Part shown: positions 1 to 54,247 of the stretch, in pieces
Layout: each line of letters begins with the position of its first letter
Numbering within the stretch: position 1 is the stretch's first letter
Assembly: GCF_036588685.1 (NCBI RefSeq)
Contig: NC_086386.1
Location: 1,302,001 to 1,366,000 of the forward strand
Direction: 5' to 3'
DNA: 64,000 nt
From: Mytilus trossulus
Lineage: Eukaryota
Position numbers and translations under genes: made by a program
The notes under the pieces: generated by a model
Databases searched by the model: none
What the model was told of the DNA's origin: nothing
Seen by the model: the letters and a program-made list of their open reading frames with translations, nothing else

Positions 1-859
1 TTCCATATCACCACCAAGATACTTGAACCTACCTTTTCTAGTAAAGCAAAATCTAAACCTTTGACCAAATGGGTATGTTCCATATCACCACCAAGATACT
101 TGAACCTACCTTTTCTAGTAAAGCAAAATCTAAACCTTTGACCAAATGGGTATGTTCCATATCACCACCAAGATACTTGTACCTACCTTTTCTAGTAAGG
201 CAAAATCTAAACCTTTGACCAAATGGGTATGTTCCATATCACCACCAAGATACTTGTACCTACCTTTTCTAGTAAAGCAAAATCTAAACCTTTGACCAAA
301 TGAGTATGTTCCATATCACCACCAAAATACTTGTACCTATCTTTTCTAGTAAAGCAAAATCTAAACCTTTGACCAAATGGGTATGTTCCATATCACCACC
401 AAGATACTTGAACCTACCTTTTCTAGTAAAGCAAAATCTAAACCTTTGACCAAATGGGTATGTTCCATATCACCACCAAGATACTTGTACCTACCTTTTC
501 TAGTAAAGCAAAATCTAAACCTTTGACCAAATGGGTATGTTCCATATCACCACCAAGATACCTACCTTTTCTAGTAAAGCAAAATCTAAACCTTTGACCA
601 AATGGGTATGTTCCATATCACCACCAAGATACTTGAACCTACCTTTTCTAGTAAAGCAAAATCTAAACCTTTGACCAAATGGGTATGTTCCATATCACCA
701 CCAAGATACTTGTACCTACCTTTTCTAGTAAAGCAAAATCTAGACCTTTGACCAAATGGTTATGTTCCATATCACCACCAAGATACCTACCTTTTCTAGT
801 AAAGCAAAATCTAAACCTTTGACCAAATGGGTATGTTCCATATCACCACCAAGATACTT
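1..859 (-). repeat. 77-bp tandem array (at least 11 copies, two 71-bp variants) made of the IK exon 7 3' end plus its splice donor
   Basis: TTCCATATCA recurs at 1, 78, 155, 232, 309, 386, 463, 540, 611, 688, 765 and 836. The minus-strand unit is 69 nt coding (KYLGGDMEHTHLVKGLDFALLEK) plus GTAGGT(T/A)C. The array runs off the window. Confidence 0.95.
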
Positions 860-3800
860 AGATTCCTGGATTACTTGTTTTCTTCTTTCAGCATAGTTTT
901 CTCCTCTATCAATCAAAAGACAATAGTAATGCTTTAAATTCATTATAGTTGGGAATACATTTATCAGAGATTATCAACATAATCACGGAGTAAATCATTA
1001 TTATTTTTATTTTTTAAACCCATCTCATGGCTTATAGATATAAAAGTACACATTTCAGTTTGAATCCCAGACAGACCATCCTGGTAACTTAGATATAAAA
1101 GAAAGATTACTGATTCCACCCTAAGATGGACCCTACGGTTGCTGGTAATTTCTTTCTTTTCTTATAACCATAAACATCACTCAGGGAACATGAGTACCTT
1201 TATGTTTCATAGTATGTACACTCACTGACTCTAACTCCTTATCTATGAAATTTACATTGTTTTTTTGTTGAGTTTTATTTATCACATCATTTATAGTACA
1301 TGTTTGCAGATTTTTTATGTCATTTGCTCCAAATTCAATATTTATGTTTTTGAACCACAGATTCAAATGTTCCACAAATTACAACTTTCCTAAATGCATT
1401 GAACACAAAAATCTGCAAAACCACAAAGACTTACGTCTTAACATCAGGACTATAAATAGACTTACGCCTTAACTTCTGGACTATAAATTTACTTACGCCT
1501 TAACATCTGGAGCAACAGCTCTGTAATCAGCTGTAGTACTAACAATTTCTGTTTCTTCGTAATCTTTGTTGTGACCATCACGTCTTTCTCGAGCCTGAAA
1601 TAATACGGCAAATACAACATTATTATTATAATCACCTAATTATTCAGACTACAACTTCATTCAGCAGAGTGGGTATTTGAGAATAACTACCGGTAAGTTG
1701 ACATGTGCAAGTGGACACTCAAGTATCATTCAGTAGACTTTTTTAGTTTTTTTTGTCTCTTTGACACATTCCCATTTCCATTTTCAATTTTATTATTGAG
1801 TGGGTATTTAAGTATCATTCAGGAAGCATCTGTGAGTGGGTATACATGTTTCATTCAATATACATGCTAGAATGGGTACCATGCTGAAGACATGATGAGC
1901 ACTCTATTTCCTATATGGTATGTACATGTATGATACATCTGTAATTACTACAATAAACTAATATCTTTTAAAGAAATCTTATTTTGTGTGCCTTTTTCTT
2001 ATCACTCTAGAACATAACTATTTCTCAAGCATTCCTATCTCTGTACTCTATTTCTTGTAACTAATGGCAACCTTACCCTATCTCTGTATTCTATTTCTTG
2101 TAACTAATAGCAACCTTACCCTATCTCTGTACTTTATTTCCTGTAACTAATGGCAACCTTACCCTACCTCTGTACTTTATTTCTTGTAACTATTGGCAAC
2201 CTTACCCTATCTCTGTACTTTATTTCTTGTAACTAATGGCAACCTTACCCTATCTCTGTACTTTATTTCTTGTAACTATTGGCAACCTTACCCTATCTCT
2301 GTACTTTATTTCTTGTAACTAATGGCAACCTTACCCTATTTCTGTACTTTATTTCTTGTAACTAATGGCAACCTTACGCTATCTCTGTACTTTATTTCTT
2401 GTAACTATTGGCAACCTTACCCTATCTCTGTACTTTATTTCTTGTAACTAATGGCAACCTTACCCTATCTCTGAACTTTATTTCTTGTAACTATTGGCAA
2501 CCTTACCCTATCTCTGTATTTCTCTTCAAGCTCCTTCTGTTTCTCTTCTTCCATTCGTTTAAGTTTAGCATAGTAACTGTAATGGAAAAACATATTTTTG
2601 GGGGTAAAGTTCAAGGCTCAACGCACTCAACTTCAGAATCAACACAAAAATTTAAAATATAAGTGATTAATAGTGGTAAAATTGTTTCTACAACTTAAGG
2701 ATGTCTGCTTGTCATGTTTTGGAATTATTATCAGATTTTCGGAATCCTCTGGTTTTATCCATTTGAATGCCTTAAAAAAAATTCCCCATGAACCCCCATT
2801 TTTCTTTTTATAAATCTTTAACATGTATAATTATAAATCATTTGTAAAAGTCTTATAAAATTTTATTTATTTTTTAATAGTATTTGAGAACTTTAACTGG
2901 TCAATGATAAAGCTATAAAAAATCAAGAGAGAACATTTTCCCGCCAAAATTCCAATAGCTAATATCTCGAAAACAAGTACATGGACCCCTGTATTTTGTT
3001 TGCTATTTTGATTCCTCAATTTATTTCCTATCAATACATACTAGTTTTATGAAAAGTTATTTATTTTGAAACTGAGCAGCGGACATCCTTAAGTTTTAAT
3101 ATAACAGCACCACCATTTTTTTTGTGGAAACTTGTGGTATTATTTCAGAGAGATCCATACACTGTTCCACAAGTTTTTGTCTGGAAACTAGAAAAACTTT
3201 GTGGTTATATACCTTGCCTTTAAATTTCATAGATTTCTATTTACTTATACAAGAGTTATTGTTTGGAAACCAAATGCCTTCAGATTACGCTGACGATGAC
3301 GTGATACCAATATATGACAGCAAAAGAAAAATTGAAAAAAATAAAGGATGATTTTAAAAGTCTCCCTTCTGAAAAAAATGGCCAATATTTAAGATTCATT
3401 CTAGGTTCTTCATTCCAATGTGAAGAGTATCTAACAGTGACAACAAAGTGATACAAGTCAAAAAACATTTCATCCTGTGATGTAAACTGGAAAATTGACC
3501 AATCAAAATCAAGATTTGCTCTAGTGTCATACTATTTGCCTTATAGTAGCATGTGACCTTCAAACAAAAGCATGTCAAATCCAGTTAAAATGTAACAGAA
3601 GAAGACAAATCTGCTTCCCTACAGGATTTAAATGAGAAACATATGTGGTGTCCATATTTCATCAGTACAAAATCAATTATATATGATTGATAAATCATAG
3701 CACAAATATCAACTCAAATATAATTCAGATAATCATAAAATAAGCTTTTTTATTAGTTGTTAATTTACTATTGGTGAATACTAAATCTTACATTTTCTTT

Positions 3801-11600: not shown

Positions 11601-14600
11601 ATATAAAAAATCTTAAGTAATATTTTTTTTGTTCAATCAATAATGAAAGTGAAATATGAAATAGTGAAATAATAATTTGCATTTAGCAGCCAAAATGGTT
11701 TAATTTTGTCAAATTAAGCAATGAAACATTGATAATTACTGTTTCACTTGCAAGTGAATTAGCCGACCTCATTCAATCCATATTCATGTGAACTTCAATT
11801 TAACCCCTCGCTAGAGATTGACAACGCATGCATTATACATGTACGTGTACAGGTTATTTAAAGAAAAAAGAATGTCAACAATGAAAGTGAAACTACAGTA
11901 AATCATTTGATTACTGATTCTATCTATATAAAATCATTCTTATACGGTTAAAAACAATGAGACACATAAATTTTAATCTATAAGATAAAATCAAACAGAC
12001 CTATAAAAATCCAATTGCACATGTTGGTTTAATCTATTGATATTGTTATTTATGTTTACATCGCTTATATGGTCATCTGAGGTCAAATCAATAGTTAATT
12101 AGATGGTGTCTGGACTAACATACACATGAAACAAACCTACATATTATCTATGCCATGCTCTGTATCCTGTTTATTTTAGACTTTTGGTAGTTTGGATAAA
12201 TGTTTTACATTGTTATAAATCAATTATGAGAATTTGAGTCAAATCGGTGACCATGAATTTGACAGCTAATGCCCCTTTAAGAAGTACAAAATAAGACCTA
12301 AGTCATTAATATTATTTCATCTCAAATAACTCGAGTACTGCTGTAACCATAATATAGAATTACTTTAAAGGTTAAAAAGTAAAAACTTAAATATTTACTG
12401 TGAAAAGATATTGTATTGTAATTCTGTTCAGATTCATTTCGTAGTTTACAATCAAATTGATACATCTGCGTTTCCGGTTTATATTCAGACTCGAAAGATG
12501 CATGTTGCATAGCATCAATTTGCTAGATAAAGTCATTAAAAACCTTTTCATTTGTCAACGTTTGCTTTACAAATCTCTTCAGCCTTTTACATAACCCGTA
12601 CAAATCGTTTTGTTATCGCAAATCAACCATACTGGTGATGGGTTCATGACTTATTAATTTGTCTGTGTCTGTGAAACACAAGCTCCACATGATTTTTAAC
12701 CCACATAACAATTACCAAAAATAGTAGAAAAACTACAGAGGGACCTTCATGACAGTTATAATTCATACTCAACTAAGGGGAGCATGGAGGCTTGGCATTT
12801 GAATCGTTACAAAGGGCAATTAATGAAAATATTGATACTTCTAAAATGAAAGTTCAAAAATATAATTTAAATAAGCAATGAATTAGCATGTTCACAATTC
12901 CTTACATTGAGGGAAGAAATACTTTGGATCACGCTACACTGTACAGAATAGACATGGTAAGTGATGGTGAAAGTTCCTCCATCGTTAAATTTTCATCCAT
13001 GGAGATCCCTGGTCCATCATTGAAATATTTGTAAGAACTACGGGTCATAGTATTAAAGATTCATCGGAAACAGACCAGTTATGATCAAATCCTGATAATT
13101 TTAATAATGAATATCGACGCATGAATGGCACAGCTGACAAAAGAAAGAAAAAAATTACTCATTCCACTCGCATTAACATACTTTTAAATATGTATTTTAT
13201 CATTATAGCGAAGTGTTTAAAGGTGTCAATATCAGTGACGGTACACCTACCTCATGAAATTGCCATTATTCTGAATACATTTATGGCCCCAGTCCCCATG
13301 TTATAACAGGAGACATTAACATTGTTTATGACTGAGAGTGGAAATCATTCTAAGTAAAGGACCTAAATATCCTTCCCGGTCAATTATTAATTGGAATGAG
13401 TGTCCTAACAACATCATCCACAACTTGTTCGGTACTTAAAATGGATAAAACAAGAAAAACATGTTGAAATTTAAATTTATTGAATGACTAAAATGATCTG
13501 TATGTGTTTTATAGGTTGTGCACCTCCTGTTGGCTCATATGATCCTAAACAGAAGGATAAAGCTGTTTCTATGCAATTTGATAAAGGAGGGGATCGATTC
13601 AAAACACCAAAAGGTAATATATGTATTGTTATAAACTGGAAGGGATCTTTTCAAAACATCAATAGGTAATATATATTGTTAGATATAACAGGGGATCGAT
13701 CAGTTGGACTCAACATTACCATTTGTCAGCTTCATGAGCTTGTCCAGGACAAATGAAAATAGGTGAAGGACAAGAAGCCATAGAAGTAAACGTTTTATAA
13801 AAACAATGTTATTTCTGTTATAGAGAAATGACACTTCTATGCTATCAGGTTCCCTTTTACCAACGAAAATCACAAAAATGGTATCCATTGAATATTAATG
13901 AATCCACAGTTAACTGTAATCACTAGCTAGCCAGTCAACATCAAGGGCACTACCGCTTCCTCCAGCAATAATAACTGATTGCCACAAAATAGCTCAAAAG
14001 TGGTATTAAAACACAAACAATCAATCATTATTGTTTAACTAAATATTACAAACTTTATATACTGGCAAGTGAGTTTGTAAATGTAAAATTGTAATTTCTT
14101 TTTTTCAGATATTCTTCTTGGACCTGGATCTTTTGACATTGATACACCAGTTAAAAAGTGCCCATTGAATCAATCAACATGTAGTAATGGGGTTAGTAGC
14201 TGAAGCTTTTGATAGATCTAATTAAGAAATAATTCATGGGAGCTTGAATATATCTAGATTTTACCACGGGTTGCCCCTTTATGACAAATATTCTAACATG
14301 ACGTCCTTCAAACGCTTTGCGTACACACCCGTGGTAAAATATGAATATATTGCCAGTGCTGTTCCGATTGTACTCCCACGTCATATGCTTTTTTATGAAT
14401 GAGATACCCGAAGTCATAGAACAATGACGTTAGAATGTAAGCATTTTATGGGAAAATACACGCTTGTGAATCTGAAAATCATCACAAGGAAACATACACA
14501 AATGATGCTAAAATGTGGCAAAAGCCCTTTATTGAACATCATATAAGACATATATAAATAAATTATTATTCAAATTCATCCAAAACTGTCTAAATACATT

Positions 14601-17600: not shown

Positions 17601-20600
17601 TGTAAAAAAATTAAGGAAATACAATTATGTAACACATCAACGAACGACAACCACTGAATTACAGGCTCCTGACTTGGGACAGGCACATACATAAATAATG
17701 TGGCGGGGTTAAACATGTTAGCGGGATCCCAACCCTCCCCTAACCTGGGACAGTGGTATAACAGTACAACATAAGAACAAATTATTTATACAATATGAAT
17801 TATGAAAAACAAATATGAGACATGACCCAATGACAACCACTGAATTACAAGCTCCTGACTTGGTATAGGCACATAAAGAATGTTGCAGGGTTTAACATGT
17901 TTATGAGTGGTCAGCAATTCCCTTACCTGGGACAGTGGTTACAGCACAACAATTGAAGTCTGGTACTTTGATAGAGAATGATAAGAATTATGTCATGACA
18001 TTGTGATAATGAGAAAACATGGCATGTTGGATACGGTATAACAGTTGTAATATTTTACATTTTTTTTTTAGATATTGATGCTGATCATAACTGCACACCT
18101 AGGAACAACTCAGAAATAAGCAGTAAGTAACATACATTGGGGGGAAAACCGTTTATGTGGATTTACCTTCATTAGGAACATGCAATGCCGAAATATTTAC
18201 AAGCCAGGGATGTACACAAACAGAAACATTTTTAAAAGAGCTACTTTAACAACAATTATTTCACTTTAATTTCACATGCAAAACTTTTAATGGTATTTAA
18301 TTTGAAAAAAATCAACCCCAAACTAAAACTTTGTTTAGAAACCAAAAGTTTTAAAAATTTGTTTTACATCTTCCATTTTTAAAAAGTAAAACTTTCTTCA
18401 AAAATTTATATTTTCACTAAAATTTAATTTTGAATCTAGACATAAATTAAATTAACAAGAATAAAATGTTCATGTATATTGGATGGAAAAATGCAGTTGA
18501 AACCCTGTTTATGAGTCTAGACATTGAATATTCCACAAAGCAGCCAATCACATCCATATTAGATATTCCTATAAAAAATGAATTGCCAATAGCACAAAAT
18601 TGTAGATATCTTAAAATGATGGAAAAATTATTTGAAGATGTTTAACTTACTGTTGAAGTATTTTGGTAAAAATGTTTGATTTCTTATTACAGGTTTCAAA
18701 AGAAAAGGCAGTGAAGATTTGGCTGTCAATATGAAAACAGAAAACCCCAAGAAAATCATTGAGGTAAAACTGCATATCTATATAACAAGAAAATCGTTGA
18801 GGTAAAACTGCATATCTATATAACAAGAAAATTGTTGAGGTAGAACTGCATATCTATATAACAAGAAAATTGTTGAGGTATAACTGCATATTTATATAAC
18901 AAGAAAATCGTTGAGGTATAACTGCATATCAATATAACAAGAAAATTGTTGAGGTAAAACTGCATATTTATATAACAAGAAAATCGTTGAGGTATAACTG
19001 CATATCAATATAACAAGAAAATTGTTGAGGTAAAATTGCATATCTACATGTTTATACCAAGAAAATCATTGAGGTAAAACTGCATATCTACATGTTTATA
19101 CCAAGAAAATCGTTGAGGTAAAACTGCATATCTACATGTTTATACCAAGAAAATCATTGAGGTAAAACTGCATATCTACATGTTTATACCAAGAAAATCA
19201 TTGAGGTAAAACTGCATATCTACATGTTTATACCAAGAAAATCGTTGAATAAAATACCTCTGAGTGAGAAATTTGTAAAAAAAAAATTTACATATCTATA
19301 TATAAAGGTATAGAACCACTAATTCAGGCCTGGTTTGAAAGAAAGCAGTACATATTTTAAGCAAAATAGTTCCTACGCATAGCTGTTTCTTTGTCAATAG
19401 AAGGAATATTTTGGTAGTTTTGAAAGTTTCTTTTGATTAATAAAGAGGCAAAGTTGCTTGTCTTTATAACAAATGAGAAAATGTAAAAATTAAAAAAAGA
19501 AGAAATCTAGAAACAGAAATACAGCTGTAACTGTGTCATGGTATCAACTGATTCAAGGATAACCCTTTGTATCTATTACAGCTAATTTCCTAAAGCATGT
19601 AGAGCAAGACTTTAGTTAGCTTACTGGCTTTGTTTTTATATTGTACAATAATTAGGATAACACCCAATTAAATTCAAATATTATATATACAGGTTAAACT
19701 TTGCCTATATATATTGTTTAAAGATGTTAATTTTATTTACAAAGCTTGTATAAAAAATTATACAAACAAAGCAAGCAAGGCAACCAAAGTTTTGCTTTAC
19801 ATGCATTAGGAAATTAGCTGTAATGATATTTCATGATTTGACTCTGATTTGTAGAAGTTACAGAAACGTTTTAATGAGACAATTCAAGAGTTCGACAAGA
19901 AGATACAGTTGTTTAAGACCCGGTATGAAAGGATTATGGCGGACAAAGTAGATCTGGAACAAAATCTGGAGAAAAAGGAGATAGCCTTGAAAGATTATAG
20001 GGAGGAATCTGACACTCTTGAAAAAAACAGGTAATTTAGAATAACATGTGTAAAATAAAAAGGTGTGGTATGATTGCCAATGAGACAACTGTCCAACACA
20101 GTTCAAATGATAACGGATTTAAAGAACTATAGGTTACCTTATGACCATCAATAATGAACAAAACTCATACTGTATATAGTCAACTATAAAAAAAACCCAG
20201 ACATAACAAAATATGAAAATTTAGTGACAAAAACCGACTGGAACCTACAACTTCCATTTAATTACACACAAAAAACATGGGACAGTGGTATAAAAGCCAT
20301 ACATTAGAATAAACTATTAAAAGTCGACTCATCAGATCTTCACAATGTGGTCATGGGTGCATCGGTAGCGAGTGGTCTAAGTAGTTCTACTATTGTTATC
20401 ACTAGTCAGTCAACACTGAGGTTGTGACATTGATCCCTGCTCGTGCAAATGCTCTCGATTTCAATCTTTTTTTTCTGGGATTGTCAGTTTTCATATCAAA
20501 GGTCTGTGGTTTTCTCATAGCACTCTGGCTTCCTGCACCAATAAAGTTATAAAAATTTATTAAATTATGTTGATTGATTATTTACACTAATGATTCTACT

Positions 20601-32787: not shown

Positions 32788-35700
32788 ATGTCATCAGCAA
32801 ATAACATTAGCGACGATTTTAAAGAGAAATGGTACGTATTATTGGGGTCAAACCTATAATCCGACAGTCTTATAATCTGACACTCCAAGAGTCTGTCAGT
32901 CCTATAATCTGACAGCTGATAATCTTACTCACGGTCACTTGTCTCTGAAAAATAGTGTCCATCCAGACTGTGTTTCCAGTTTTCATGGTGTCGCGCTAAA
33001 ATTTAAAACCAAGCAATCCTGCATCATGCTCAGACCCCAATACACTTTAATATCGCTATTTAGTCCATTCCGGGAAAAACAGTCATTTAAACAACTTCCT
33101 GTTTAGGTCACCGGCCGAAAAATGGAGGTCATCAGTAGTGAGCTGAGGGAGTAAAAACTTTAGAAAGTGATCATCAAGAAACTTTGATATAGTATGCTCC
33201 ACTTTTTTCGAAATTAAAATTGAAGTATAAAGTTATTTTGCTTGTAGTATTTACGGTAGTTTAAACAGGTCTCATTAAAAAGTATCAAGCATGGTGAATT
33301 GTTTAAACAGGGTCCCAGATAGCTTCAACTGGATGAAAAAGTTGTGTAATTTTATAACTAATCCGGAATGGAATAAATAGCGATTAGGTGTATGAAACCC
33401 ACCCTATATTTTTTTAAACAAAAAAATTATCAAATCAGTCAGTATAACATCTTGGTTTAATAATATAGGAGAAAAACCAGTTGTGTCCATCTTCTTTTAC
33501 ATTATTTCCGTCATTGCATGTTTGCCCAGCAAAATTGAATTTTATTTCTAGCAGACATGGTAAATATTGGCCTTTCACTGAAACACTGTCAGTTTGTGGT
33601 ACACATTCCCTTGACGCTCTCAGCAATTTATCAACAGATTTCCTTCTGATCTGGGGAACCGCAGCTATTCAACATCAAAAGAGGGAAATGATTATTTCGT
33701 TTTTCTGTCAAATGGGTCTGGAAAGTGCAAATTCTTGATTATCCTTACTGTCTTTATAAGAAATGATCTTATATAACTTATTTTAAAAAAAGAATTGTCT
33801 ACTACCCTATTATCTAAGCCATTTCATTAACTATGTATAAACATAAAATTAAATTTTATTTTAGTGAAGTCACTGGTGTTATAAATGGTAAGCGAGAGAA
33901 CTATTTAGATTGGCCTGATTATTTCATGGCAATTGCATTTCTTTCTGCACAAAGAAGCAAAGATCCTAGAACCCAGGTAAGATATATTGATGTTATTATG
34001 GTTAGGATTATATCTACTTGGGGAGTGACTCTTGAAATGGTGATACTAGCCTGATTATCAGTACTTGTTATCGTTTGGTATGATTTGGAATATATCCTTT
34101 CACCAATAGGTCATTGACAATTTGTTGGGGATGGGGTCTGTCATCAGTGTTGCTTTTCTACCAAAGACAACACAGGCTCCAGATAACCAGCTGTCTAAGC
34201 TAAGGTACAAATTGTGGATAAACCAGAGTTTCTCTGTAGATCAAAATATTTCAAAATTGTAAGGTTGGCCAGGTCAGTAGGTATTTGTTTTTTTTTAACC
34301 AAAACATAACTGAGGGGGGAAAGGAGGGGGTCTTGATTCTGAATTCCCGGGTTTAAAAACACTAATTTCGAGGTCCCGAAATTAAATAAAGTAAATCCCG
34401 TCATCCTAAAATCCTAAAAAAAAAAATCCTGGATCCGGAAAGGGCCAATCCCGAAATCCAGAGCTTAAAAACAGCTGATCCCGGAGTCCTGATAAAGGTC
34501 CTATTCCACCTCATAACTTATATGATCTAGACAAGAAAATGATGATCAGATCATGAAAAACATCAGTAGAAGTTACAAAACTTTTAAAACAGTTATTGTT
34601 ATAAAATTGCTCAGGTAGGCTTCTTTTTAGGTGGGTGGGTCGGCAACATCAAACGAATGAAATTTTATTTTTGGCCTTATTTCTATATTGTGAAATTTTC
34701 CAATTGTGAAAGAAAAGGTTTTACTAAATTAAAAAAATTACACATTTAAAATTTTGCTATCATTACTTTTCAAGAAGGCAGCATATACATAAAAAAAATT
34801 CAATTATAAATCTAGCAATAACATTGTTTAAAAAACCACTATGGTAAATGTACTAAAAAAAATCTGAATATTAAGTGAGTATATAATAGTTTTGATAATA
34901 CTGTACTGAATGTATATGTAAAAAACTAAAACAACTAATAGATAGTTTATATCTGTTAACTTCAAAAGGTAATGCGGTAGCAGATATTGGTTTCCTTCAT
35001 TATGACAGTAACTTGATAATCTTGAAATACAACCCCTAAAAACACCATATGACACCAAAAGAAATATACATCTTTAATTTCTGTTTACCTTTCAGGTAGG
35101 GGCTTGTATTGTTAACGAGGAAAATAAAATTGTTGGAATTGGATATAATGGTATGCCAATTGGTTGTCATGACGATTTAATGCCATGGGGACGTGAACAT
35201 TCAGATGTTTTACAAACAAAACAGCTTTATGGTATTATATAGTTTTTACACCTAAGTTTAGAAGAAATTACATCATGTACATTGCTCTTCTCTAGCAGCT
35301 AGCCTGTATGTTTCCAAATAGCAGTTTTCAATGACAACTCAAATTTTGCCTGGGCTACTGAAGTGTCATTTGTAACACCATGAAGTTATTAAGTTTCTAT
35401 GACGTCTAATATTTTACATTAAATTGTGTGGTCAGAGGTAAAAAATGTCTAAATTTATTGCACATGATACAGTTTATATTTGTTGATTTGTATAAAAAAA
35501 ATGCAGAACATTTTGGGAAACCTCAAAACAAAAGGCAATTTAGGATTGCTTACTTCTCCATAAAATTAAACTGAATATGTGTTTATTTTCAGTTTGCCAT
35601 GCAGAATTAAATGCTGTTCTGAACAAGAACTCATCAGATGTGAATCATTATGTGTTTATTTTCAGTTTGCCATGCAGAATTAAATGCTGTTCTGAACAAG

Positions 35701-38152
35701 AACTCATCTGATGTGAATCATTATGTGTTTATTTTCAGTTTGCCATACAGAATTAAATGCTGTTCTGAACAAGAACTCATCTGATGTAAATCATTATGTG
35801 TTTATTTTCAGTTTGCCATACAGAATTAAATGCTGTTCTGAACAAGAACTCATCAGATGTGAATCATTATGTGTTTATTTTCAGTTTGCCATGCAGAATT
35901 AAATGCTGTTCTGAACAAGAACTCATCCGATGTGAATCATTATGTGTTTATTTTCAGTTTGCCATGCAGAATTAAATGCTGTTCTGAACAAGAACTCATC
36001 CGATGTAAAGAACTGTACAATATATGTGGCTTTGTTCCCATGTAATGAGTGTGCTAAAGTTGTTATACAGTCCGGTATCAAACAAGTCGTTTACTATTCA
36101 GATAAATATCATGAAAAACCAGAATTCATTGCTTCAAGGAAAATGATGGACATGGCTGGAGTGAAATACAGGTAAATAAATAATGGACATGGCTGGAGTG
36201 AAATACAGGTAAATTAATGATGGACATGGCTGGAGTGAAATACAGGTAAATTAATGATGGACATGGCTGGAGTGAAATACAGGTAAATTAATGATGGACA
36301 TGGCTGGAGTGAAATACAGGTAAATTAATGATGGACATGGCTGGAGTGAAATACAGGTAAATTAATGATGGACATGGCTGGAGTGAAATAATGGCTGGGG
36401 TGAAATACAGGTAAATTAATAATGGACATGGCTGGGGTGAAATACAGGTAAATTAATAATGGACATGGCTGGGGTGAAATACAGGTAAATTAATGATGGA
36501 CATGGCTGGAGTGAAATACAGGTAAATTAATGATGGACATGGCTGGAGTGAAATACAGGTAAATTAATGATGGACATGGCTGGAGTGAAATACAGGTAAA
36601 TTAATGATGGACATGGCTGGAGTGAAATACAGGTAAATTAATGATGGACATGGCTGGAGTGAAATACAGGTAAATTAATGATGGACATGGCTGGAGTGAA
36701 ATAATGGCTGGGGTGAAATACAGGTAAATTAATAATGGACATGGCTGGGGTGAAATACAGGTAAATTAATAATGGACATGGCTGGGGTGAAATACAGGTA
36801 AATTAATGATGGACATGGCTGGAGTGAAATACAGGTAAATTAATGATGGACATGGCTGGAGTGAAATACAGGTAAATTAATGATGGACATGGCTGGAGTG
36901 AAATACAGGTAAATTAATGATGGACATGACTGGAGTGAAATACAGGTAAATTAATGATGGACATGGCTGGGGTGAAATACAGGTAAATTAATAATGGACA
37001 TGGCTGGGGTGAAATACAGGTAAATTAATGATGGACATGGCTGGAGTGAAATACAGGTAAATTAATGATGGACATGGCTGGAGTGAAATACAGGTAAATG
37101 AATAATGGACACAGCTACAGTTTAATAACTAGCATCACAAGGATATGTCATTGGAAATAGGCATGTGTATGAGAAAAGTTCAGACATGTGTTAGAAAACA
37201 TCAAAATTGTTTGTTGAGAAAATCAAACACTTGTAAGAAAAGTTCAGACATGTGTTAGAAAACATCAAAATTGTTTGTTGAGAAAATCAAACACTTGTAA
37301 GAAAAGTTCAGACATGTGTTAGAAAACATCAAAATTGTTTGTTGAGAAAATCAAACACTTGTAAGAAAAGTTCAGACATGTGTTAGAAAACATCAAAATT
37401 GTTTGTTGAGAAAATCAAACACTTGTAAGAAAAGTTCAGACATGTGTTAGAAAACATCAAAATTGTTTGTTGAGAAAATCAAACACTTGTAAGAAAAGTT
37501 CAGACATGTGTTAGAAAACATCAAAATTGTTTGTTGAGAAAATCAAACACTTGTAAGAAAAGTTCAGACATGTGTTAGAAAACATCAAAATTGTTTGTTG
37601 AGAAAATCAAACACTTGTAAGAAAAGTTCAGACATGTGTTAGAAAACATCAAAATTGTTTGTTGAGAAAATCAAACACTTGTATTTAAAGAAAAGTTCAG
37701 ACATGTGTTAGAAAACATCAAAATTGTTTGTTGAGAAAATCAAACACTTGTAAGAAAAGTTCAGACATGTGTTAGAAAACATCAAAACTGTTTGTTGAGA
37801 AAATCAAACACTTGTAAGAAGAGTTCAGACAGACAGCAATCAAAAAAAAAGGGAAGACATTTAGTGGTTAACACACTCCTTTTTCAACAATAAACTGTAC
37901 ATACACAAAATATTTGGCTCTCAATCTGTCGGACTTTAAAAAAAATATAAAAAAAAGTTTTACCATTCAATCTCAACTGCTGATATATAATTACTCCCCA
38001 AAAGAGTGTTTACAAAAGGCAATTTACAACTTTTGTTACTTTTATTTTTCAGACAACATATTCCCAAGAAAACGCAGATTCTAATAGATTTCAGTGTGAT
38101 TGAAAATATGACACAAGAAGTTAAAGACGTACTAAACAAGGAATCAGATTAA
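32788..38152 (+). CDS. DCTD: Deoxycytidylate (dCMP) deaminase, 5 exons, 201 aa
   Basis: Exons 32788-32831 (least certain), 33865-33976 ([29 protein letters not shown]), 35096-35231 ([21 protein letters not shown]), 35958-36171 ([20 protein letters not shown], with the HAE and PCxxC zinc motifs) and 38053-38152. Total 606 nt with consistent phases. Confidence 0.95.
34312..34512. mobile_element. MITE with GAGG...CCTC termini and 6-bp TSD
   Basis: ATAACT|GAGGGGGGAAAGGA ... TCCTATTCCACCTC|ATAACT, with internal ATCCCG/ATCCTG subrepeats. Confidence 0.65.
35576..36006 (+). repeat. 73-bp tandem array (6 copies) spanning the DCTD exon 4 acceptor
   Basis: Unit TATGTGTTTATTTTCAG|TTTGCCATGCAGAATTAAATGCTGTTCTGAACAAGAACTCATCNGATGTGAATCAT. 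AG ends at 35592, 35665, 35738, 35811, 35884 and 35957 (authentic). Confidence 0.97.
36143..37110 (+). repeat. 37-bp tandem array (about 26 copies) spanning the DCTD exon 4 donor
   Basis: Unit ATGATGGACATGGCTGGAGTGAAATACAG|GTAAATTA with the authentic donor at 36172. A truncated variant recurs 313 bp apart (36391 and 36704), showing higher-order duplication. Confidence 0.97.
37172..37830. repeat. 64-bp minisatellite (about 10 near-identical copies), purely intronic
   Basis: Unit AGAAAAGTTCAGACATGTGTTAGAAAACATCAAAATTGTTTGTTGAGAAAATCAAACACTTGTA starting at 37172, 37236 and onwards. Confidence 0.95.
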
Positions 38153-48527: not shown

Positions 48528-51500
48528 TCAATCGTCCTCAATAGACCCATGAAAAATCCAACTTTCTTCTACAATAACTTTAACTCGTTTCTCATACTCC
48601 CTTTTATTGTCTTTGTATAGCTGGGCTGCCACATTATTTGCAGGGCTATTTGGATTTGGTTCATCAAGCAAAGACTGAAATAATACCCAAATTGGGACTA
48701 AACTTTATTTTAAAATTTACAGTATTTTATGACTATATGATAACGTTCATTGTTAGAATTTATAACCATTTAACTACTATTGAATAGATGAACTGTTAAC
48801 ACAGAGATTTGTCTGTGTGGCCTTAATACAATTTATCATTGCAGACAACAAGTTACCTCCCTTACCAACATGATCAAGATCTCTGAAATGTTTAAGTCAT
48901 ACTACATAAATCATTATCACAGAAAAAATCCTAAAAACTTTCTCATTTCAGATATCTGATCATAAAAATGCTTTGATTTGATTGTTCTCAATCATAAGTT
49001 TTTTTTGTAAAACTTGATAAAACACAAGTGAAAATAAAATAAATCCCTTGAATTTTACAACTGATTAAAAACATGATGCTGTAACTAGCAACAGATGAAA
49101 AATTACCCATTTGTCAGGCATATTTTTACTCTTTTTTTTTGGTGCTTACTTAACAATACCATAACTGACATTGGACTTAACAAGACTGGAACACATCTAA
49201 ATGGTACAATTCAATCAAACATTAACAAACATATGTTGCCCTTTCAGAAATGACTGTTAGGGGCTGTCTCATAACATATTTATATTGAAATTCTAATACT
49301 TTACGAGTTCAATTGACATGACTATTTTCTGAATTTCAGAATTATAAACAGCTCAATATGCTGATCAACATTCTAAAATGATGTTAGTTATAAAATCTAC
49401 ATGTAGTTTAAAATTAACGACACCAAATAAGGAAAAGTTCTGAGACAACCCCTTACAAGGAAAAGATATGTGTACATTATCAATGGAGAGATTTTTAACT
49501 GCATGTCTAATTAATGAAAGCTGTTGCTATGACAATTCTTTAGTTGTGTCCTCCTCATCGTCCGAATCATCTTGCCAGCTTTGTTGCACTATTGATGCTA
49601 CTTTTTTCTCATATTCTCGCCGATTTTCTCTATATAACTGAGCAGCTTCATTATTTGCTGGGCTATTTGGATTTGGATCGTGAAGTAAAGACTAAAATCA
49701 GAAAGAGACAATAATGTGCTAGGATGATGACAGATATGGATGATGAAGATGACCTAAAGTAATGTCGTCAACAACGGGATGTTAAACCAAAATAATTTAT
49801 TTTCTGTTTATTTCTAATTGTTTAATTTCCAAGCACCTGTACAAAGTAACATGATGTAAGGGAAGCAACCAACTGAAGACAATAATCTCTCAATTCCTTA
49901 TAAATGACTCATATGATAATTTCACTGTACATATACACATTCATATTTCAATATTTGTTAAATTTGCTTGGCTATAACAAGTAAATGCCTTGACCTTGAG
50001 TAAATTTTTAAATATATTTTAGTTTTTTTTCAATTTTTATTAAAATACCAGCAAAGTAAAATGTGTAATGTCTTGTAAAATCTTACAAATGATACAATGG
50101 TTGATGATTAATACCCATGTTCTGATATAGAGGTAAATATGGCTAGTGTTATATGTAACCTTACCTGTATAGAGGTAAATATGGCTAGTGTTATATGTAA
50201 CCTTACCTGTATAGAGGTAAATATGGCTAGTGTTATATGTAACCTTACCTGTATAGAGGTAAATATGGCTAGTGTTATATGTAACCTTACCTGTATAGAG
50301 GTAAATATGGCTAGTGTTATATGTAACCTTACCTGTATAGAGGTAAATATGGCTAGTGTTATATGTAACCTTACCTGTATAGAGGTTAAAATGGCTGATG
50401 CATCATATGTAGGACTCTACCTGTATAGAGGTAAATATGGCTAGTGTTATATGTAACCTTACCTGTATAGAGGTAAATATGGCTAGTGTTATATGTAACC
50501 TTACCTGTATAGAGGTAAATATGGCTAGTGTTATATGTAACCTTACCTGTATAGAGGTTAAAATGGCTGATGCATCATATGTAGGACTCCATCTATTTTG
50601 TAAAATATCTAAACATATACTACCATCAGCATAAACTGAAACAATATAATGTTAGTAAATAAATACATTATCAACAAGCAATTCATACAAATTCATAAAA
50701 TAACAAGAATGTGTCCAAAGTACACGGATGCCGCATTCACACTATCATTTTCCATTTTCAATGGACCCTGAAATTTGGCAAAGAATTTAATTTGGCATTA
50801 AAATAAGAAAGATCATATACCATAGGGAACATGTAATTGGACTTCAACTTCATTAAAAACTACATTGACCATGTTGACCAAAAACTTTAACCTGAAACTC
50901 GCACTTTCATATTCTATGTTCAGTGGACTGTGAAATTGGGGTTAAAAGTCTAATTTGGCTTCAAAATTAGAAATATCATATCATAAGGAGCATGTGTATA
51001 AAGTTTCAAGTTGATTGGACTTCAGCTTCATCAAAAACTACCTTGACCAAAAACTTTAACCTGAAGCGGGACAGATCAACAGACGTACAGACCAGAAACG
51101 TAATGCCCCTCTACTATCGTAGGTGGGGCATAAAAATAATTGAATACATTCCTGTACCAAAATGTGTTGTGGATTGATGGTTATTCTGGAACTTTGTATA
51201 AAACACAAAGAAAGATGCGTTTGTTAACTTGTCATTATATACAGCTCATAAATTAATCAGTCAAATTTATAAGTAAGTGTATGTTCACTTGTGTTAATAT
51301 GTCTTTTGATTGAGTCCAGCCATTTCAACTGATATTTTATAGTGTATGTGTCTTTCTATGTTGTGATGTTACACTATTGTTTCTGGAAAGGGTGAGGGTT
51401 GTACCTACATGTAATAAAACAATGTACCCTATCAAAACGTTTAAAAGCACCGCTGTATTTGTTTGCACCTGTCCAAAGTTAGGAATCTGATGTTCAGTAG

Positions 51501-54247
51501 TTGTTGTTTGTTGATGTGGTTCATAAATGTTTCTCATTTCTCTTTTTATTTTGTAGATTTGATTCTTGGTTTTCTCGTTTAAATGGTTTTACACTAGTCA
51601 TTAATGGAGCCCTTTATAATTTGCTGTTTGGTGTGAGCCAAGGATCCGTGTTGAAGACCATACTTTGACCTATAATTGTTTACTTTTACAAATTGTGACT
51701 TGGATGGAGAGTTGTCTCTTTGGCACTCATAACATCTTCTTATACATGTATCTATGATGACCTTCTGCTGTTGTTTTTTATTTGGTCGGGTTGTTGTCTC
51801 TTTGACACATTCCCCATTTCCATTCTCAATTTTATCTATGAGTTTGAATGAGCACCAGGACCTAATAATATGTCAAGCTCTACATCATTCTTAGGATGTT
51901 TGTACTAAATACACACTTACCATTAGGGTGAAACATTTTAGATACAAATCGTACTGTAGGAAATTTGTACTAAATACACACTTACCATTAGGGTGAAACA
52001 TTTAAGATACAAATCGTACTGTAGAAATCTATACTAAATACACACTTACCATTAGGGTGAAACATTTAAGATACAAATCGTACTGTAGGAAATCTGTACT
52101 AAATACACACTTACCATTAGGGTGAAACATTTTAGATACAAATCGTACTGTAGGGGGTTTATTTGGATATTCTTCAGTGAATTCTACTGTTAATTTAAAT
52201 GTACCATCTTCAAAAGGTGTGTCATGTGGCCTAAAACAGAATATATAACAAATAAAGTTCATGAAACAAGCAATAAAATAAGACTGTAAACAAACTAAGC
52301 TCAAATTTCAAAATGTATGTTAAGAAATCATTTTATAATTATAGGGATGCAGTAGTGTCAAGTCTCTTCTTTTAACATGAGACTCCACATATGCATGCTT
52401 AATTGGTGGCATTTTTCTTTGATTCATTGTTCTTCTCTGATGTTTTCTGGAAACCATAACAGGGTCAGGATCGATATCATGTATCATAACAGAGTTCTCA
52501 CATGAGCCCATGAGTCATAATGAAAATCTGTATTTGAAAAATGTCAAAATAATTCTGTTGCCCTGTTTATCATTTCTTTGATCAGAGTCATTTAACCATA
52601 TTGTAATCAGGATACTAAGGAAAATAAATGTAGAATGGTATAGAAAGAAAACAGCTCTAGAGAGGGAGTTTTTTGTTCGAGATAAGTGTTCTTCAAAGTT
52701 TTAAGATTATGCCCCCATATTGTTGAGTCTGCAGTTTAAATGTTGTAAACTTGTATAACTGTTTCTTTGGTTTATTTAAAGGCACTGGCTACGGTTACAC
52801 GGAAATGTAACAATAATAAAAATATTATTGTTACATTGGAGACTAAATGCCAGAATGCATGGTTGGGCAAGGACCTGTTTAGTTACGAATGTAACAATAA
52901 TTATTGAGGCTACGGTTACATTGCGTTATTGTTACATGAAAAACAGCAATGTACGATGGGACTAGTAATATGTACTAAATTATAAAAGTTGTAGACATTT
53001 ATTTTATATTTACAATACATAAATTTATTACATACAATTTATTTACTGTAACTTTTTATTTACAATGACAATTTCTACAAATCCAGTAACTGGTTTTGAA
53101 AGTCCGACATTTTTTATGAACACAATTACATCCTCCACGGAAACGTGTACATACAAAAGTTCTTAGTATTTAAGTTACAGTTAGCAAACTTTGCTTTTGA
53201 TGTATCAATTTGCGTCAAGTTGTATAGCTGTATGAAATTTATGTCTTGATATTGTTTCAGTTTCGTTTAAAACGCATCCCAAGTTTTCTTTTTTTTCTCT
53301 CACCCTAAACACTATTTGTTGAATAATAATATTTACTATCTATCATTATTACAAGTATTATTTGGTACATATGAAAGAATTAAGCAACACGACTATAGAA
53401 GATTTAAGTTTAATAAACAAGCGTACTGTTTTTCATGTAACAATAAAGTTATGTAACCGTAGCCTCAGTAATTATTGTTACATTCGTAATTTTTCGGTTC
53501 CTCGCCAACTTTGCATTCCGGCAATTAGTCTCCCATGTAACAATAATATTTTTATTATTGTTACATTTCCATGTAACCGTAGCCAGTGCCTTATTTAAAT
53601 TGTATAATATTTAACTTTTAATTGACTTTGTGGTTCAGTTCAGACTACACCAGGATCTAATTAATTATTCATGCGACCAGGATCCCTGAAATCACGCTAC
53701 CAGAAGATTTCTAGGGTCACCCTGTTAAAGTGTATCATAGGCACTGGCAGTTGCATTGGCATAAGTAGATCTGTGGCTTATATGGCAATATGGCTAAAAG
53801 ATACACAGTTTTTTTGTAGAAGATGATGCATGTTTGTAATTGGCTTTTTATTTATTCTTTCCATGAAAGGGCACCTGTAACTTATTCAAATGTTCCTAAA
53901 TGTTTAATGTTGTTGTGCTGGAATTAGTAAACTCTGATTATTCAATGACAATGAATAGGGATTGACCTGATTATTATGACAAATTATGTTTCTCCACAAA
54001 ACTTACCCAAATATTACTGCATTCCACAACATTATGTTATTGTCTGTTGGGGCACCACTTACACCAGCAGGTGGATCTTCTTGTAATCTGAAAATGAACA
54101 GTAAGAACTTTGTAAAAAAAATATATAAACAAAAACGGAAGCCATGTTTGATAACTGTTTTGAAGTACATAATTCGTTTTAAATGAGAATAGGGCTACAC
54201 TACCTTTTAAAATCTCTCATCAATCGTCTCCTAGCAGGTGTTGACAT
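48528..54247 (-). CDS. UBE2A: Ubiquitin-conjugating enzyme E2 RAD6 (UBE2A/UBE2B orthologue), isoform using the distal last exon, 158 aa
   Basis: Exons 54247-54204 ([15 protein letters not shown]), 54087-54007 ([27 protein letters not shown]), 52230-52115 ([38 protein letters not shown]), 50635-50547 ([30 protein letters not shown], with the catalytic Cys) and 48674-48528 ([48 protein letters not shown]). Confidence 0.96.
49527..49691 (-). CDS. UBE2A: Alternative (proximal) terminal exon of RAD6/UBE2A with acidic tail, giving a 164-aa isoform
   Basis: Acceptor TCTTTCTGATTTTAG, then phase-0 [54 protein letters not shown]. It is an intact paralogue of the 48674-48528 exon. Confidence 0.88.
50125..50590 (-). 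repeat. 42-bp tandem array (10 donors) spanning the UBE2A exon 4 donor
   Basis: Minus-strand unit GTAAGGTTACATATAACACTAGCCATATTTACCTCTATACAG. Donors at 50546 (authentic), 50504, 50462, 50420, 50374, 50332, 50290, 50248, 50206 and 50164. Confidence 0.96.
50702..51136 (-). mobile_element. Short HINE-like dispersed element; related copies at about 20930-21205 (+) and 55765-56040 (+)
   Basis: Shared ends TTTTTATGCCC(C)ACCTA...TAGTAGAGGG and GGCATCCGTGTACT.TGGACAC.TTCTTGTT, and shared core GGTCAAGGTAGTTTTTGATGAAG.TGAAGTC. Confidence 0.7.
51899..52154 (-). repeat. 65-bp tandem array (4 copies) spanning the UBE2A exon 3 donor
   Basis: Minus-strand unit CCTACAGTACGATTTGTATCTAAAATGTTTCACCCTAATG|GTAAGTGTGTATTTAGTACAGATTT. 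Donors at 52114 (authentic), 52049, 51985 and 51920. Confidence 0.95.
52781..53590. mobile_element. Mutator/MULE-like non-autonomous element
   Basis: 9-bp TSD TTATTTAAA (52772-52780 and 53591-53599). ~160-bp imperfect TIRs GGCACTGGCTACGGTTACA... / ...TGTAACCGTAGCCAGTGCC with internal TGTAACAATAAT palindromic subrepeats. Confidence 0.85.

What the first reader, a model, noticed from the sequence alone, without database searches (positions are those of the whole stretch)
1..52154. Splice-junction-seeded tandem arrays: 11 splice sites in four genes are each repeated into the intron
Seen: donors of IK exons 5, 6 and 7 (43, 31, 77 bp units), HMMR exons 2, 8 and 12 (52, 38/44, 30 bp), DCTD exon 4 (37 bp), UBE2A exons 3 and 4 (65, 42 bp), and acceptors of HMMR exon 17 (71 bp) and DCTD exon 4 (73 bp) each sit inside a tandemly repeated unit made of exon end plus intron end. 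That is 11 of about 68 junctions and roughly half of the non-TE tandem arrays here, although junction neighbourhoods are a small share of the sequence. Three rules hold: units are unrelated between loci, arrays extend only into the intron, and the exon-proximal copy is the authentic site. Donors outnumber acceptors 9 to 2, and ages range from near-identical to heavily decayed, so the process recurs. Inference: purifying selection explains the polarity but not the apparent enrichment over plain intronic DNA. Candidate causes are splicing-coupled mutagenesis (Pol II pausing, R-loops or RNA-templated repair at junctions) or retention as banks of decoy/U1-binding sites that tune splicing and NMD. 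I do not know of this being described as a genome-wide system, but I could not search the literature.
Basis: partly seen in the sequence, partly recalled or inferred. Interest (0 to 1): 0.92.

Follow-up and report, generated by a model that had tools for sequence, protein, structure and literature searches.

The report
Minisatellites seeded at exon-intron junctions
In four neighbouring housekeeping genes of this invertebrate genome (bivalve-like, unverified), eleven splice junctions have been copied in tandem into the adjoining intron; the kind is known from a few human genes such as F7, but it is far more frequent here than chance placement allows, and the cell still splices at the copy next to the exon.

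Summary
All 11 junction-spanning repeats exist: nine arrays of 2.7 to about 26 copies and two old two-copy duplications. Pfam profile continuity shows that the exon-proximal copy is the true junction at five junctions (IK exons 5-7, UBE2A exons 3-4). RNA contigs show it for both ends of DCTD exon 4.

The excess is real. Nine of 12 intragenic arrays span a junction, against 9-14% expected (p about 1e-7 to 2e-6). Across the genome, arrays carrying a consensus donor word are 3 times as common as arrays carrying the reversed word (p = 5e-5). They lie mostly near chromosome ends and cluster. The window is 1.3 Mb from a contig end and has about 7 times the array density of 200 kb of other loci.

Decoy donor cores vary as much as the rest of the unit. 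Acceptor arrays occur too, and both independent cases I found elsewhere are acceptor arrays. An in-frame duplication sits inside an HMMR exon. Breakpoints keep no fixed distance from the splice site.

Best reading: neutral junction-spanning minisatellites made by an exon-edge-biased tandem duplication and expansion process in distal chromosome regions, then filtered by selection. The cause of the bias is unknown.

Single human loci of this kind are published. I found no genome-wide description. Other windows of this genome carry similar, unchecked scan notes.

The parts
1..859 (-). IK (RED) exon 7 donor array. 77-bp unit = 69 nt of exon end + 8 nt of intron, at least 11.3 copies (runs off the window). 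The last exon base of the authentic copy is 791.
   Evidence: TRF; rows; Pfam RED_N 61-99; exon end
1427..1511 (-). IK exon 6 donor array. 31-bp unit = 15 nt exon + 16 nt intron, 2.7 copies, 88% identity. Last exon base 1497.
   Evidence: (RED_N 28-59)
2034..2518 (-). IK exon 5 donor array. 43-bp unit = 12 nt exon + 31 nt intron, 11.3 copies. Last exon base 2507.
   Evidence: (RED_N 4-29)
13586..13674 (+). HMMR exon 2 donor duplication. Two copies 52 bp apart, 86% identity. Unit = 28 nt exon + 24 nt intron. Last exon base 13613.
   Evidence: the repeat finder (D4); reading and translation ([10 protein letters not shown]...)
18748..19248 (+). HMMR exon 8 donor array. 38-bp units (seven spacings) and 44-bp units (four spacings), about 12 copies. 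16 nt exon + 22 nt intron. Last exon base 18763.
   Evidence: no Pfam match for this short coiled-coil exon
22345..23044 (+). HMMR exon 12 donor array. 30-bp unit = 21 nt exon + 9 nt intron, about 23 copies, 88% identity. In frame, with no stop for 140 nt. Last exon base 22365.
27913..28023 (+). HMMR exon 17 acceptor duplication. Two copies 71 bp apart, 85% identity over 40 nt (12 nt intron + 28 nt exon). The upstream copy has decayed. The authentic exon starts at 27996.
   Evidence: the repeat finder (D6); reading (…[11 protein letters not shown]…)
35576..36006 (+). DCTD exon 4 acceptor array. 73-bp unit = 17 nt intron end + 56 nt exon start (it encodes the CHAELNA zinc site), 5.9 copies, 98% identity. 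The authentic exon starts at 35958, in the last copy.
   Evidence: RNA joint 35230>35957 with a contig running on to 36090
36142..37111 (+). DCTD exon 4 donor array. 37-bp unit = 30 nt exon + 7 nt intron, about 26 copies, with a 313-bp higher-order period marked by a 17-nt deletion variant. The authentic donor follows base 36171, in the first copy.
   Evidence: RNA loose end behind 36171 that carries the exon 5 letters, in 4 runs
50126..50589 (-). UBE2A exon 4 donor array. 42-bp units, 10.5 copies, one of them a re-copied longer exon piece. In frame. Last exon base 50547.
   Evidence: (UQ_con 75-105)
51901..52154 (-). UBE2A exon 3 donor array. 65-bp unit = 40 nt exon + 25 nt intron, 3.9 copies. 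Last exon base 52115.
   Evidence: (UQ_con 37-74)
24812..25018 (+). Comparator: an in-frame 105-nt (35-codon) tandem duplication inside the long HMMR exon. It shows that duplications of this size also arise within exons and persist when they keep the frame.
   Evidence: the repeat finder (D3); codon-shuffle test, 39/45 matches against a shuffle maximum of 33 in 200 shuffles
37172..37831 (+). Comparator: a non-junction 64-bp x10 array in DCTD intron 4. It is one of only three intragenic arrays that do not span a junction (the others are 21660-21735 and 29500-29668).

Best explanation
These are junction-spanning minisatellites of the human F7 IVS7 type. In each case a short tandem duplication (30-77 bp) happened to cover a splice junction. 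It was then expanded by slippage or unequal exchange, as the higher-order periods in the DCTD and UBE2A arrays indicate. The arrays persist because they do little harm. The spliceosome uses the copy that adjoins the real exon (first donor, last acceptor), and the other copies leave with the intron. This is shown for DCTD and inferred for the other genes. Duplications that extend into the exon, or that lie within an exon out of frame, are removed by selection. That explains the polarity and probably part of the donor excess.

The excess over intron interiors is real, so selection alone is not enough. I infer, but have not shown, a mutational bias of tandem duplication toward exons and their edges. 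This process is most active in particular distal chromosome regions such as this one, 1.3 Mb from a contig end. The decoy sites themselves appear to be neutral passengers, not a regulatory device.

The molecular cause of the exon-edge bias is unknown. My leading guess is recombination-linked repair: exons are islands of homology between very divergent haplotypes, so repair synthesis may misalign where homology ends. Transcription- or splicing-linked breakage is the second guess.
For: Anatomy and true junctions.
Splice-site choice. Four RNA-contig runs from three studies and two coded organisms show the first donor at 36171 and the last acceptor at 35958 in use.
Arrays are real molecules: contigs that cross unit-unit boundaries of both DCTD arrays appear in these independent runs.
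Excess in the window: 9 of 12 intragenic arrays span a junction, p 7e-8 to 2e-6.
Excess genome-wide: 30 distinct arrays with AGGTAAGT or AGGTGAGT per 587 Mb listed, against 24 with the reversed words per 1423 Mb. Ratio 3.0, p = 5e-5.
Regional effect: the window has 0.36 arrays/kb, against 0.04-0.06/kb in 200 kb of other loci. Seven of 11 donor-word arrays on C1 lie within 8 Mb of an end (p = 2e-4). There are clusters such as C1:92.796 and 92.814 Mb, and C2:4.18, 4.42 and 4.65 Mb.
Not donor-specific: acceptor arrays at DCTD, HMMR exon 17, L032 and L005/L006, and an in-frame duplication inside an exon.
Decoys neutral: donor-core variation 7.0% against 6.1% in the rest of the unit, p = 0.39.
Copy number is unstable: 5.2 against 6.2 copies between the putative haplotigs L005 and L006.
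Premise of divergent haplotypes: presumed haplotig pairs differ by 4-5.5%, with kilobase-scale indels outside the exon.
Against: The exon-edge mutational bias is inferred from standing variation, not from observed new mutations. Differential fixation, meaning weak positive selection on junction arrays, would leave the same pattern.
The window was picked because it is extreme, so its p-value is inflated by selection. The only unbiased genic sample is small: 2 junction arrays among 4 arrays in about 27 distinct UQ_con exon loci.
The word test uses two donor words and two reversed controls, arrays were counted by eye from the first 100 rows of each listing, and contig lengths are lower bounds.
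The neutrality test is weak because concerted evolution homogenises the copies.
RNA signal inside both DCTD arrays is non-zero while unique intron reads zero, so some decoy use cannot be excluded.
The homology-island mechanism has no direct support here.
Confidence: 0.58

Rival explanations
1. Splicing-coupled, donor-specific mutagenesis. Pol II pausing, U1 binding, R-loops or RNA-templated repair at the 5' splice site cause breaks whose repair duplicates the junction.
For: Donors outnumber acceptors 9 to 2 in the window. Donor-word arrays are 3 times as common as reversed-word arrays genome-wide. The affected genes are housekeeping or cell-cycle genes, likely to be transcribed in the germ line (inference). 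All earlier scan notes mention donors (unchecked).
Against: Acceptor arrays exist, and both independent junction arrays found outside the window are acceptor arrays. The acceptor word TTTTCAGG gives about 3.9 arrays per 100 Mb, similar to AGGTGAGT. An in-frame duplication lies inside an exon, away from any junction. The intron part of the units ranges from about 3 to 31 nt, so no breakpoint is anchored at the splice site. The donor excess is also what selection predicts, because upstream decoy acceptors are more harmful.
Confidence: 0.15
2. Functional retention. The arrays are kept as banks of decoy or U1-binding sites that tune splicing, feed NMD, or protect AT-rich introns from premature polyadenylation.
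For: Most decoys keep an intact GT (11/11, 12/12, 20/23, 23/25, 8/10). Using the second donor would cause a frameshift or an early stop in 7 of 9 arrays, as an NMD switch would need. RNA contig depth inside both DCTD arrays is above zero while unique intron is zero. UBE2A exon 4 units read CAG|GTAAGG, like recursive splice sites.
Against: Decoy donor cores are no better conserved than the rest of the unit (p = 0.39). Intact GTs are what young arrays homogenised by concerted evolution would show anyway. Acceptor arrays and the exon-internal duplication do not fit a U1 bank. Units, lengths and copy numbers share nothing between loci. The RNA signal in the arrays can come from pre-mRNA reads of many copies collapsed into one contig. 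The human precedents are treated as silent pseudo-sites (PMC1557585).
Confidence: 0.12
3. No special process. Tandem duplications arise uniformly, and the apparent excess comes from picking an extreme window, from the choice of null, and from chance.
For: The window was chosen for this property. Its array density is about 7 times that of other loci, so it is not typical. The unbiased genic sample is small. The genome-wide ratio is only 3.
Against: A uniform model predicts mostly intron-interior arrays even in a hot region, yet 9 of 12 intragenic arrays span junctions. Independent cases appear in the UQ_con sample. The reversed-word control is exceeded with p = 5e-5. Many other windows of this genome carry similar notes (unchecked).
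Confidence: 0.1
4. Assembly artefact. The arrays are mis-assembled or over-expanded repeats.
For: Copy numbers in a single assembly are not verified. Long arrays of near-identical short units are hard to assemble.
Against: Contigs from four independent runs (three studies, two coded organisms) contain unit-to-unit boundaries of both DCTD arrays. Two presumed haplotigs carry the same array, with 5.2 and 6.2 copies. An artefact has no reason to start exactly within exons.
Confidence: 0.03

Closest known systems
Human F7 intron 7 minisatellite (37-bp VNTR whose first monomer spans the exon 7 / IVS7 boundary; Borensztajn et al. 2006, PMC1557585)
   Same: A tandem array of a short unit made of an exon end plus an intron start. 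Identical donor pseudo-sites are reiterated into the intron. Only the most upstream donor is used, as shown here for DCTD. The unit size is even the same (37 bp).
   Different: F7 is a single locus with 5-9 copies and only 4 nt of exon in the unit. Here 11 junctions in four adjacent genes are affected, up to 69 nt of exon is copied, arrays reach about 26 copies, and acceptor-side arrays occur too.
Other human junction minisatellites listed in PMC1557585: IFI6 (6-16) intron 2, CBS IVS13 31-bp VNTR, LMNB2 100-bp repeat, PDGFA intron 4 81-bp repeat
   Same: The first monomer spans an exon-intron boundary, so the donor is reiterated. [quoted passage not shown]
   Different: These are isolated curiosities in a genome where minisatellites are mostly non-genic. 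No enrichment, clustering or acceptor-side counterpart is reported in that paper.
Intron gain by tandem duplication of an AGGT-containing exon segment (Rogers model; potato RdRp case, PMC4974935)
   Same: A short tandem genomic duplication creates extra splice signals, and the spliceosome removes the duplicated part.
   Different: That model creates a new intron inside an exon. Here the duplications cover junctions of introns that are already there, and no new intron is seen. I did not test whether these intron positions are conserved in other species.
Subtelomeric, recombination-associated minisatellites of vertebrates (general knowledge, not tested here)
   Same: The arrays lie mostly near chromosome ends, they cluster, their copy number is unstable, and they show higher-order structure.
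   Different: Classical minisatellites are GC-rich and mostly non-genic. These arrays are 28-38% GC, some have no CpG at all, and they are anchored on exons.

Membership tests
Junction-spanning minisatellite (F7 IVS7 type) | Head-to-tail array of a 10-100-bp unit | tested here: met
   TRF periods of 30-77 bp with 2.7 to about 26 copies at nine loci; two further loci have only 2 copies
Junction-spanning minisatellite (F7 IVS7 type) | The first monomer spans the exon-intron boundary, so the splice site is reiterated in the intron | tested here: met
   Pfam profile continuity at the first copy; exon ends computed; reading of HMMR exons 2 and 17
Junction-spanning minisatellite (F7 IVS7 type) | Only the exon-proximal site is normally used | tested here: met
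   Met for DCTD exon 4 only. The first donor (36171) is used in 4 runs. The last acceptor (35958) is used, with a contig continuing into unique exon. Minor decoy use is not excluded. The other ten junctions were not tested.
Junction-spanning minisatellite (F7 IVS7 type) | Copy-number polymorphism (VNTR) | tested here: inconclusive
   5.2 against 6.2 copies between the presumed haplotigs L005 and L006 at another locus. No second haplotype of the window was found.
Functional decoy / U1-binding site bank | Decoy splice-site cores conserved above the rest of the unit | tested here: not met
   Core variation 62/891 (7.0%) against 201/3273 (6.1%) in the rest; Fisher p = 0.39. The test is weak because of concerted evolution.
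Functional decoy / U1-binding site bank | Decoy sites are used in RNA, or array length changes splicing output | tested here: inconclusive
   Contig depth inside the arrays is 1-20% of exon depth while unique intron is 0. Collapsed multi-copy pre-mRNA could explain this. The joint to the first acceptor copy rests on only 26-30 nt, identical among copies.
Recursive splice sites | Juxtaposed 3' and 5' splice-site motif (YAG|GTAAGT) that regenerates a donor after splicing, and is used stepwise | tested here: inconclusive
   The motif is present in UBE2A exon 4 units (CAG|GTAAGG). The 42-nt spacing is very short for an intron. Use was not tested.
Intron gain by tandem duplication | A new intron is created between duplicated AGGT sites within a former exon | not tested
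   Exon matches to Pfam profiles abut at the first copy and RNA contigs splice the DCTD introns, so the duplications sit at junctions of existing introns. Whether these intron positions are old, that is shared with other species, was not tested.
Transposable-element-borne satellite | The unit belongs to a dispersed repeat family | tested here: not met
   Units are copies of the local exon sequence and are unrelated to each other. TE-related arrays in the window (4649-4924, 38768-38943, 41654-44390, 60828-62422) are a separate class. A whole-genome search with each unit was not run.

The most novel reading that the evidence does not exclude
This genome has an undescribed mutational process that makes short tandem duplications preferentially at exon edges, in hot regions near chromosome ends. 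One possible mechanism is repair synthesis that starts in exons, the only islands of homology between very divergent haplotypes, and misaligns where homology ends. Another is breakage linked to co-transcriptional splicing. Under either, a visible share of all minisatellites, and up to a quarter of junctions in hot regions, would be splice-site arrays.
Probability: 0.35. Interest if true: 0.8.

Novelty: new variant of a known kind. Interest (0 to 1): 0.6.

Why it matters
If exon edges are hot spots for tandem duplication, this genome is a natural experiment on two open questions. The first is how minisatellites are born; most work studies how they change once they exist. The second is how the spliceosome picks one site among many identical ones. 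Here there are dozens of natural F7-like test cases, including the harder acceptor-side version at DCTD, where five identical upstream acceptors are bypassed.

There is a practical side. Gene predictors and RNA-seq aligners will misplace junctions in such arrays. Copy-number variation in the arrays can look like splicing variation.

If the bias proves to be linked to heterozygosity or recombination, it would tie genome architecture in highly polymorphic marine invertebrates to a specific repair outcome.

Tried and rejected
I replaced it with spaced-word pattern counts.
2. Ras-domain exon sample. The best hits were intronless genes, useless for junctions. I used them only for array density.
3. 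Laying RNA on the whole of DCTD exons 2-5. I laid the part with fewer copies, as the tool advised. As a result the exon 4 to exon 5 joint is seen only as a loose end that carries the exon 5 letters.
4. CpG or methylation-driven breakage. Rejected, because three of nine array units contain no CpG and a fourth almost none (0.09 per unit).
5. A fixed breakpoint at the splice site, as spliceosome-catalysed cleavage would give. Rejected, because intron parts range from about 3 to 31 nt and exon parts from 12 to 69 nt.
6. The idea that arrays end exactly at a junction position. Seen in two of eight arrays, so treated as chance.
7. Orthologous loci in related species through protein look-ups. Not attempted. 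Every single exon is too short for the length window of the search for homologous proteins, and I did not build or search a joined spliced model; exons were searched one by one by reference.
8. Literature. Five searches found the human single-locus cases but no genome-wide or mollusc description. PMC306954 is not held.
9. Total match counts of the word test (719 against 399, and 241 against 164) are dominated by a few long satellites, so I counted distinct arrays instead.


Full report
**Setting.** The window is G000:C14:1302001-1366000, in a 1.30-Gb assembly of 541 contigs. GC content is about 32%. The genome has about 14 chromosome-scale contigs and bivalve-type repeats, so I take it for a mussel-like bivalve. 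That is my inference from memory, not a tool result. C14 is at least 78 Mb long, so the window lies in the distal 2% of the contig.

**The observation.** TRF and row-wise printing on the gene strand show nine arrays. In each, the first unit is continuous with an open exon frame and contains a GT donor (in one case an AG acceptor) plus a few intron bases.
- IK: 1-859 (77 bp), 1427-1511 (31 bp), 2034-2518 (43 bp).
- HMMR: 18748-19248 (38/44 bp), 22345-23044 (30 bp).
- DCTD: acceptor array 35576-36006 (73 bp) and donor array 36142-37111 (37 bp).
- UBE2A: 50126-50589 (42 bp), 51901-52154 (65 bp).

The two other claimed cases are old two-copy duplications (read). One is the HMMR exon 2 donor (13586-13674, 52-bp spacing). 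The other is the HMMR exon 17 acceptor (27913-28023, 71-bp spacing).

They hit RED_N at profile positions 4-29, 28-59 and 61-99, dCMP_cyt_deam_1 at 52-101, and UQ_con at 37-74 and then 75-105. The profile matches abut at the exon-proximal copy, so that copy is the real junction. The HMMR exons are recognisable by eye ([10 protein letters not shown]…, …[11 protein letters not shown]…) but give no Pfam match. Units are unrelated between loci.

Exon parts of the units are 12-69 nt and intron parts about 3-31 nt. The mean intron share of a unit is about 0.37. That fits random placement of a unit across the junction.

**RNA evidence.** Following the tool's advice I laid 33800-36420 with four runs (three studies, two coded organisms), all held as contigs.
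- GT..AG joints link DCTD exon 2 to exon 3 (33973>35093).
- They also link exon 3 to the last acceptor copy (35230>35957). One contig continues into unique exon sequence to 36090, which fixes this choice.
- A second joint, to the first acceptor copy (35230>35592), rests on only 26-30 nt that are identical in several copies, so it is ambiguous.
- In all four runs contigs leave the genome at 36171 and continue with the first letters of exon 5. The first donor is therefore the one used.
- Contigs that cross unit-unit boundaries of both arrays exist in these independent runs, so the arrays are not assembly artefacts.
- Depth inside the arrays is 1-20% of exon depth, while unique intron reads zero. 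This could be decoy use, or multi-copy pre-mRNA collapsed into one contig. I cannot tell which.

**Is it more than chance?** With one set of criteria (period 20-200 bp, at least 2.5 copies), the window has about 23 arrays, or 0.36 per kb. That compares with 0.06 per kb in 96 kb around UQ_con exons and 0.04 per kb in 104 kb around Ras-domain genes.

Inside the four gene bodies, 9 of 12 arrays span a junction. The exceptions are 21660-21735, 29500-29668 and 37172-37831. For uniformly placed duplications the expected share is junctions times unit length over gene length. That is 9-14% with 68-80 junctions and with arrays collapsed to one copy. The binomial tail is 7e-8 to 2e-6, and 6e-5 even at a 20% share. 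Because the window was chosen for this feature, I looked for independent evidence.

**Independent sample.** A UQ_con search of the whole genome gave 30 exon loci. Outside the window these hold four distinct arrays, and two of them span junctions. L032 (C4:3.007 Mb) has a 57-bp x5 array. L005/L006 (a UBE2C-like exon on C15 and C6) has a 62-bp array. Both are acceptor-side arrays whose last copy runs into the real exon. L005 and L006 look like two haplotypes and carry 5.2 and 6.2 copies.

**Whole-genome word test.** No more sequence could be fetched. I therefore searched for three spaced copies of a donor word and of the same word read backwards.

| Word | Distinct arrays | Sequence listed |
|---|---|---|
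| AGGTAAGT (donor) | 11 | C1, at least 113 Mb |
| AGGTGAGT (donor) | 19 | about 473 Mb |
| TGAATGGA (reversed) | 14 | about 630 Mb |
| TGAGTGGA (reversed) | 10 | about 793 Mb |

The rate ratio is 3.0 (30 arrays per 587 Mb against 24 per 1423 Mb; p = 5e-5). If such a word makes up a few percent of donors (general knowledge), a ratio of 3 means that roughly a tenth of all arrays of this size class are donor arrays. Donor neighbourhoods cover under 1% of the genome.

The acceptor word TTTTCAGG gives 16 arrays in about 407 Mb. Its control was not listed.

Donor-word arrays are distal. Seven of 11 on C1 lie within 8 Mb of an end (p = 2e-4). They also cluster, for example at C1:92.796 and 92.814 Mb, and at C2:4.18, 4.42 and 4.65 Mb. 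Notes from other windows of this genome report the same kind of array in symplekin, TRAPPC1, UBE3C, survivin and others. Those notes are unchecked, and I use them only as leads.

**What bears on mechanism.**
1. Decoy donor cores (-3..+6) carry as many variants as the rest of the units (7.0% against 6.1%, p = 0.39). Most decoys keep GT, as expected for young, homogenised arrays.
2. Three of nine units have no CpG and a fourth almost none, so CpG damage is not the driver.
3. A 105-nt in-frame tandem duplication lies inside the long HMMR exon. It scores 39/45 matches, and none of 200 codon shuffles exceeds 33. Duplications of this size therefore also arise within exons and survive when they keep the frame.
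4. Acceptor-side arrays exist, and no breakpoint is fixed relative to the splice site.
5. Using the second donor would shift the frame or meet a stop in 7 of 9 arrays. In HMMR exon 12 (30 nt) and UBE2A exon 4 (42 nt) it would add in-frame residues.
6. Presumed haplotig pairs differ by 4-5.5% and by kilobase-scale indels outside the exon. Exons are thus islands of homology between haplotypes.

**Reading.** The arrays are members of a known kind: minisatellites whose first monomer spans an exon-intron boundary. This kind is described for human F7, IFI6, CBS, LMNB2 and PDGFA, where the most upstream donor is normally chosen (PMC1557585).

Three things are new here. The density is high: 11 junctions in four adjacent genes. 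Acceptor-side arrays are present. And there is a measurable excess, both genome-wide and in distal clusters.

Selection explains the polarity and probably part of the donor excess, since upstream decoy acceptors are more harmful. It does not explain why junction arrays outnumber intron-interior arrays. I therefore infer a bias of tandem duplication toward exons and their edges, strongest in certain distal regions, with the decoys as neutral passengers.

The cause of that bias is not shown. Repair that misaligns at the edge of exon homology islands, in a recombination-active and very heterozygous genome, is my leading guess. Transcription- or splicing-linked breakage comes second. A donor-specific, U1-linked process and a regulatory decoy bank are each less likely on the present evidence, though neither is excluded.

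**Limits.**
- I did not verify the total number of junctions or build full gene models.
- Only DCTD has RNA support.
- Copy numbers rest on one assembly.
- The word test uses few words and hand counts from truncated listings.
- No cross-species comparison was possible.
- No literature search outside the held library was possible.

Noticed in passing
window 36172-38039: DCTD intron 4 (about 1.87 kb) consists almost entirely of two unrelated arrays: the 37-bp donor array (970 bp) and a 64-bp x10 array (37172-37831). Without them the intron would be about 240 bp.
   Followed up: partly
window 35576-36006: Five identical upstream acceptor copies are bypassed in favour of the sixth. Each copy from the second to the sixth has a branch-point-like CTCAT about 32 nt upstream, supplied by the exon-derived part of the preceding unit. 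How the last copy is chosen is unexplained.
   Followed up: partly
window 48576-48692 and 49593-49700: There are two UQ_con matches to the same C-terminal profile segment (100-138 and 103-138), that is, a duplicated last UBE2A exon. The search reports stops inside the second match.
   Followed up: no
window 39763-40903: A 30-bp x38 array that is open in long frames on both strands (398 aa on + and 304 aa on -). It may be a coding decapeptide repeat or a chance effect of the unit.
   Followed up: no
window 45182-45883: A 72-bp x9.8 array with an uninterrupted 252-aa frame on the minus strand (24-residue repeat QDILTDKTQSIETVGAENVSSSHS). It may be an in-frame coding array of an unannotated gene.
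   Followed up: no
window 33038-33394: A roughly 355-bp dispersed repeat with at least 40 copies at 92-96% identity across many contigs. It looks like a young SINE- or MITE-like element.
   Followed up: no
L007/L008 (C65 and C8), L010/L011 (C15 and C6), L005/L006 (C15 and C6): Pairs of loci that look like alternative haplotypes kept in the assembly. They are 94.6-98% identical around the exon and have kilobase-scale insertions or deletions in the flanks.
   Followed up: partly
G000 C1:113247037-113248536: One 35-bp array carries AGGTAAGT on the plus strand and TTTTCAGG on the minus strand. It is therefore counted in both the donor and the acceptor word lists.
   Followed up: no
G000 C1:59.29-59.34 Mb, C3:47.34-47.61 Mb, C7:7.16-7.38 Mb: There are dense clusters of single-exon or two-exon Ras-superfamily domains, meaning large tandem gene expansions.
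   Followed up: no
window 21660-21735: A 25-bp x3 array begins only 47 nt downstream of an HMMR donor (…GGAAGA|GTAAGA). Even this 'non-junction' intragenic array lies close to an exon.
   Followed up: no
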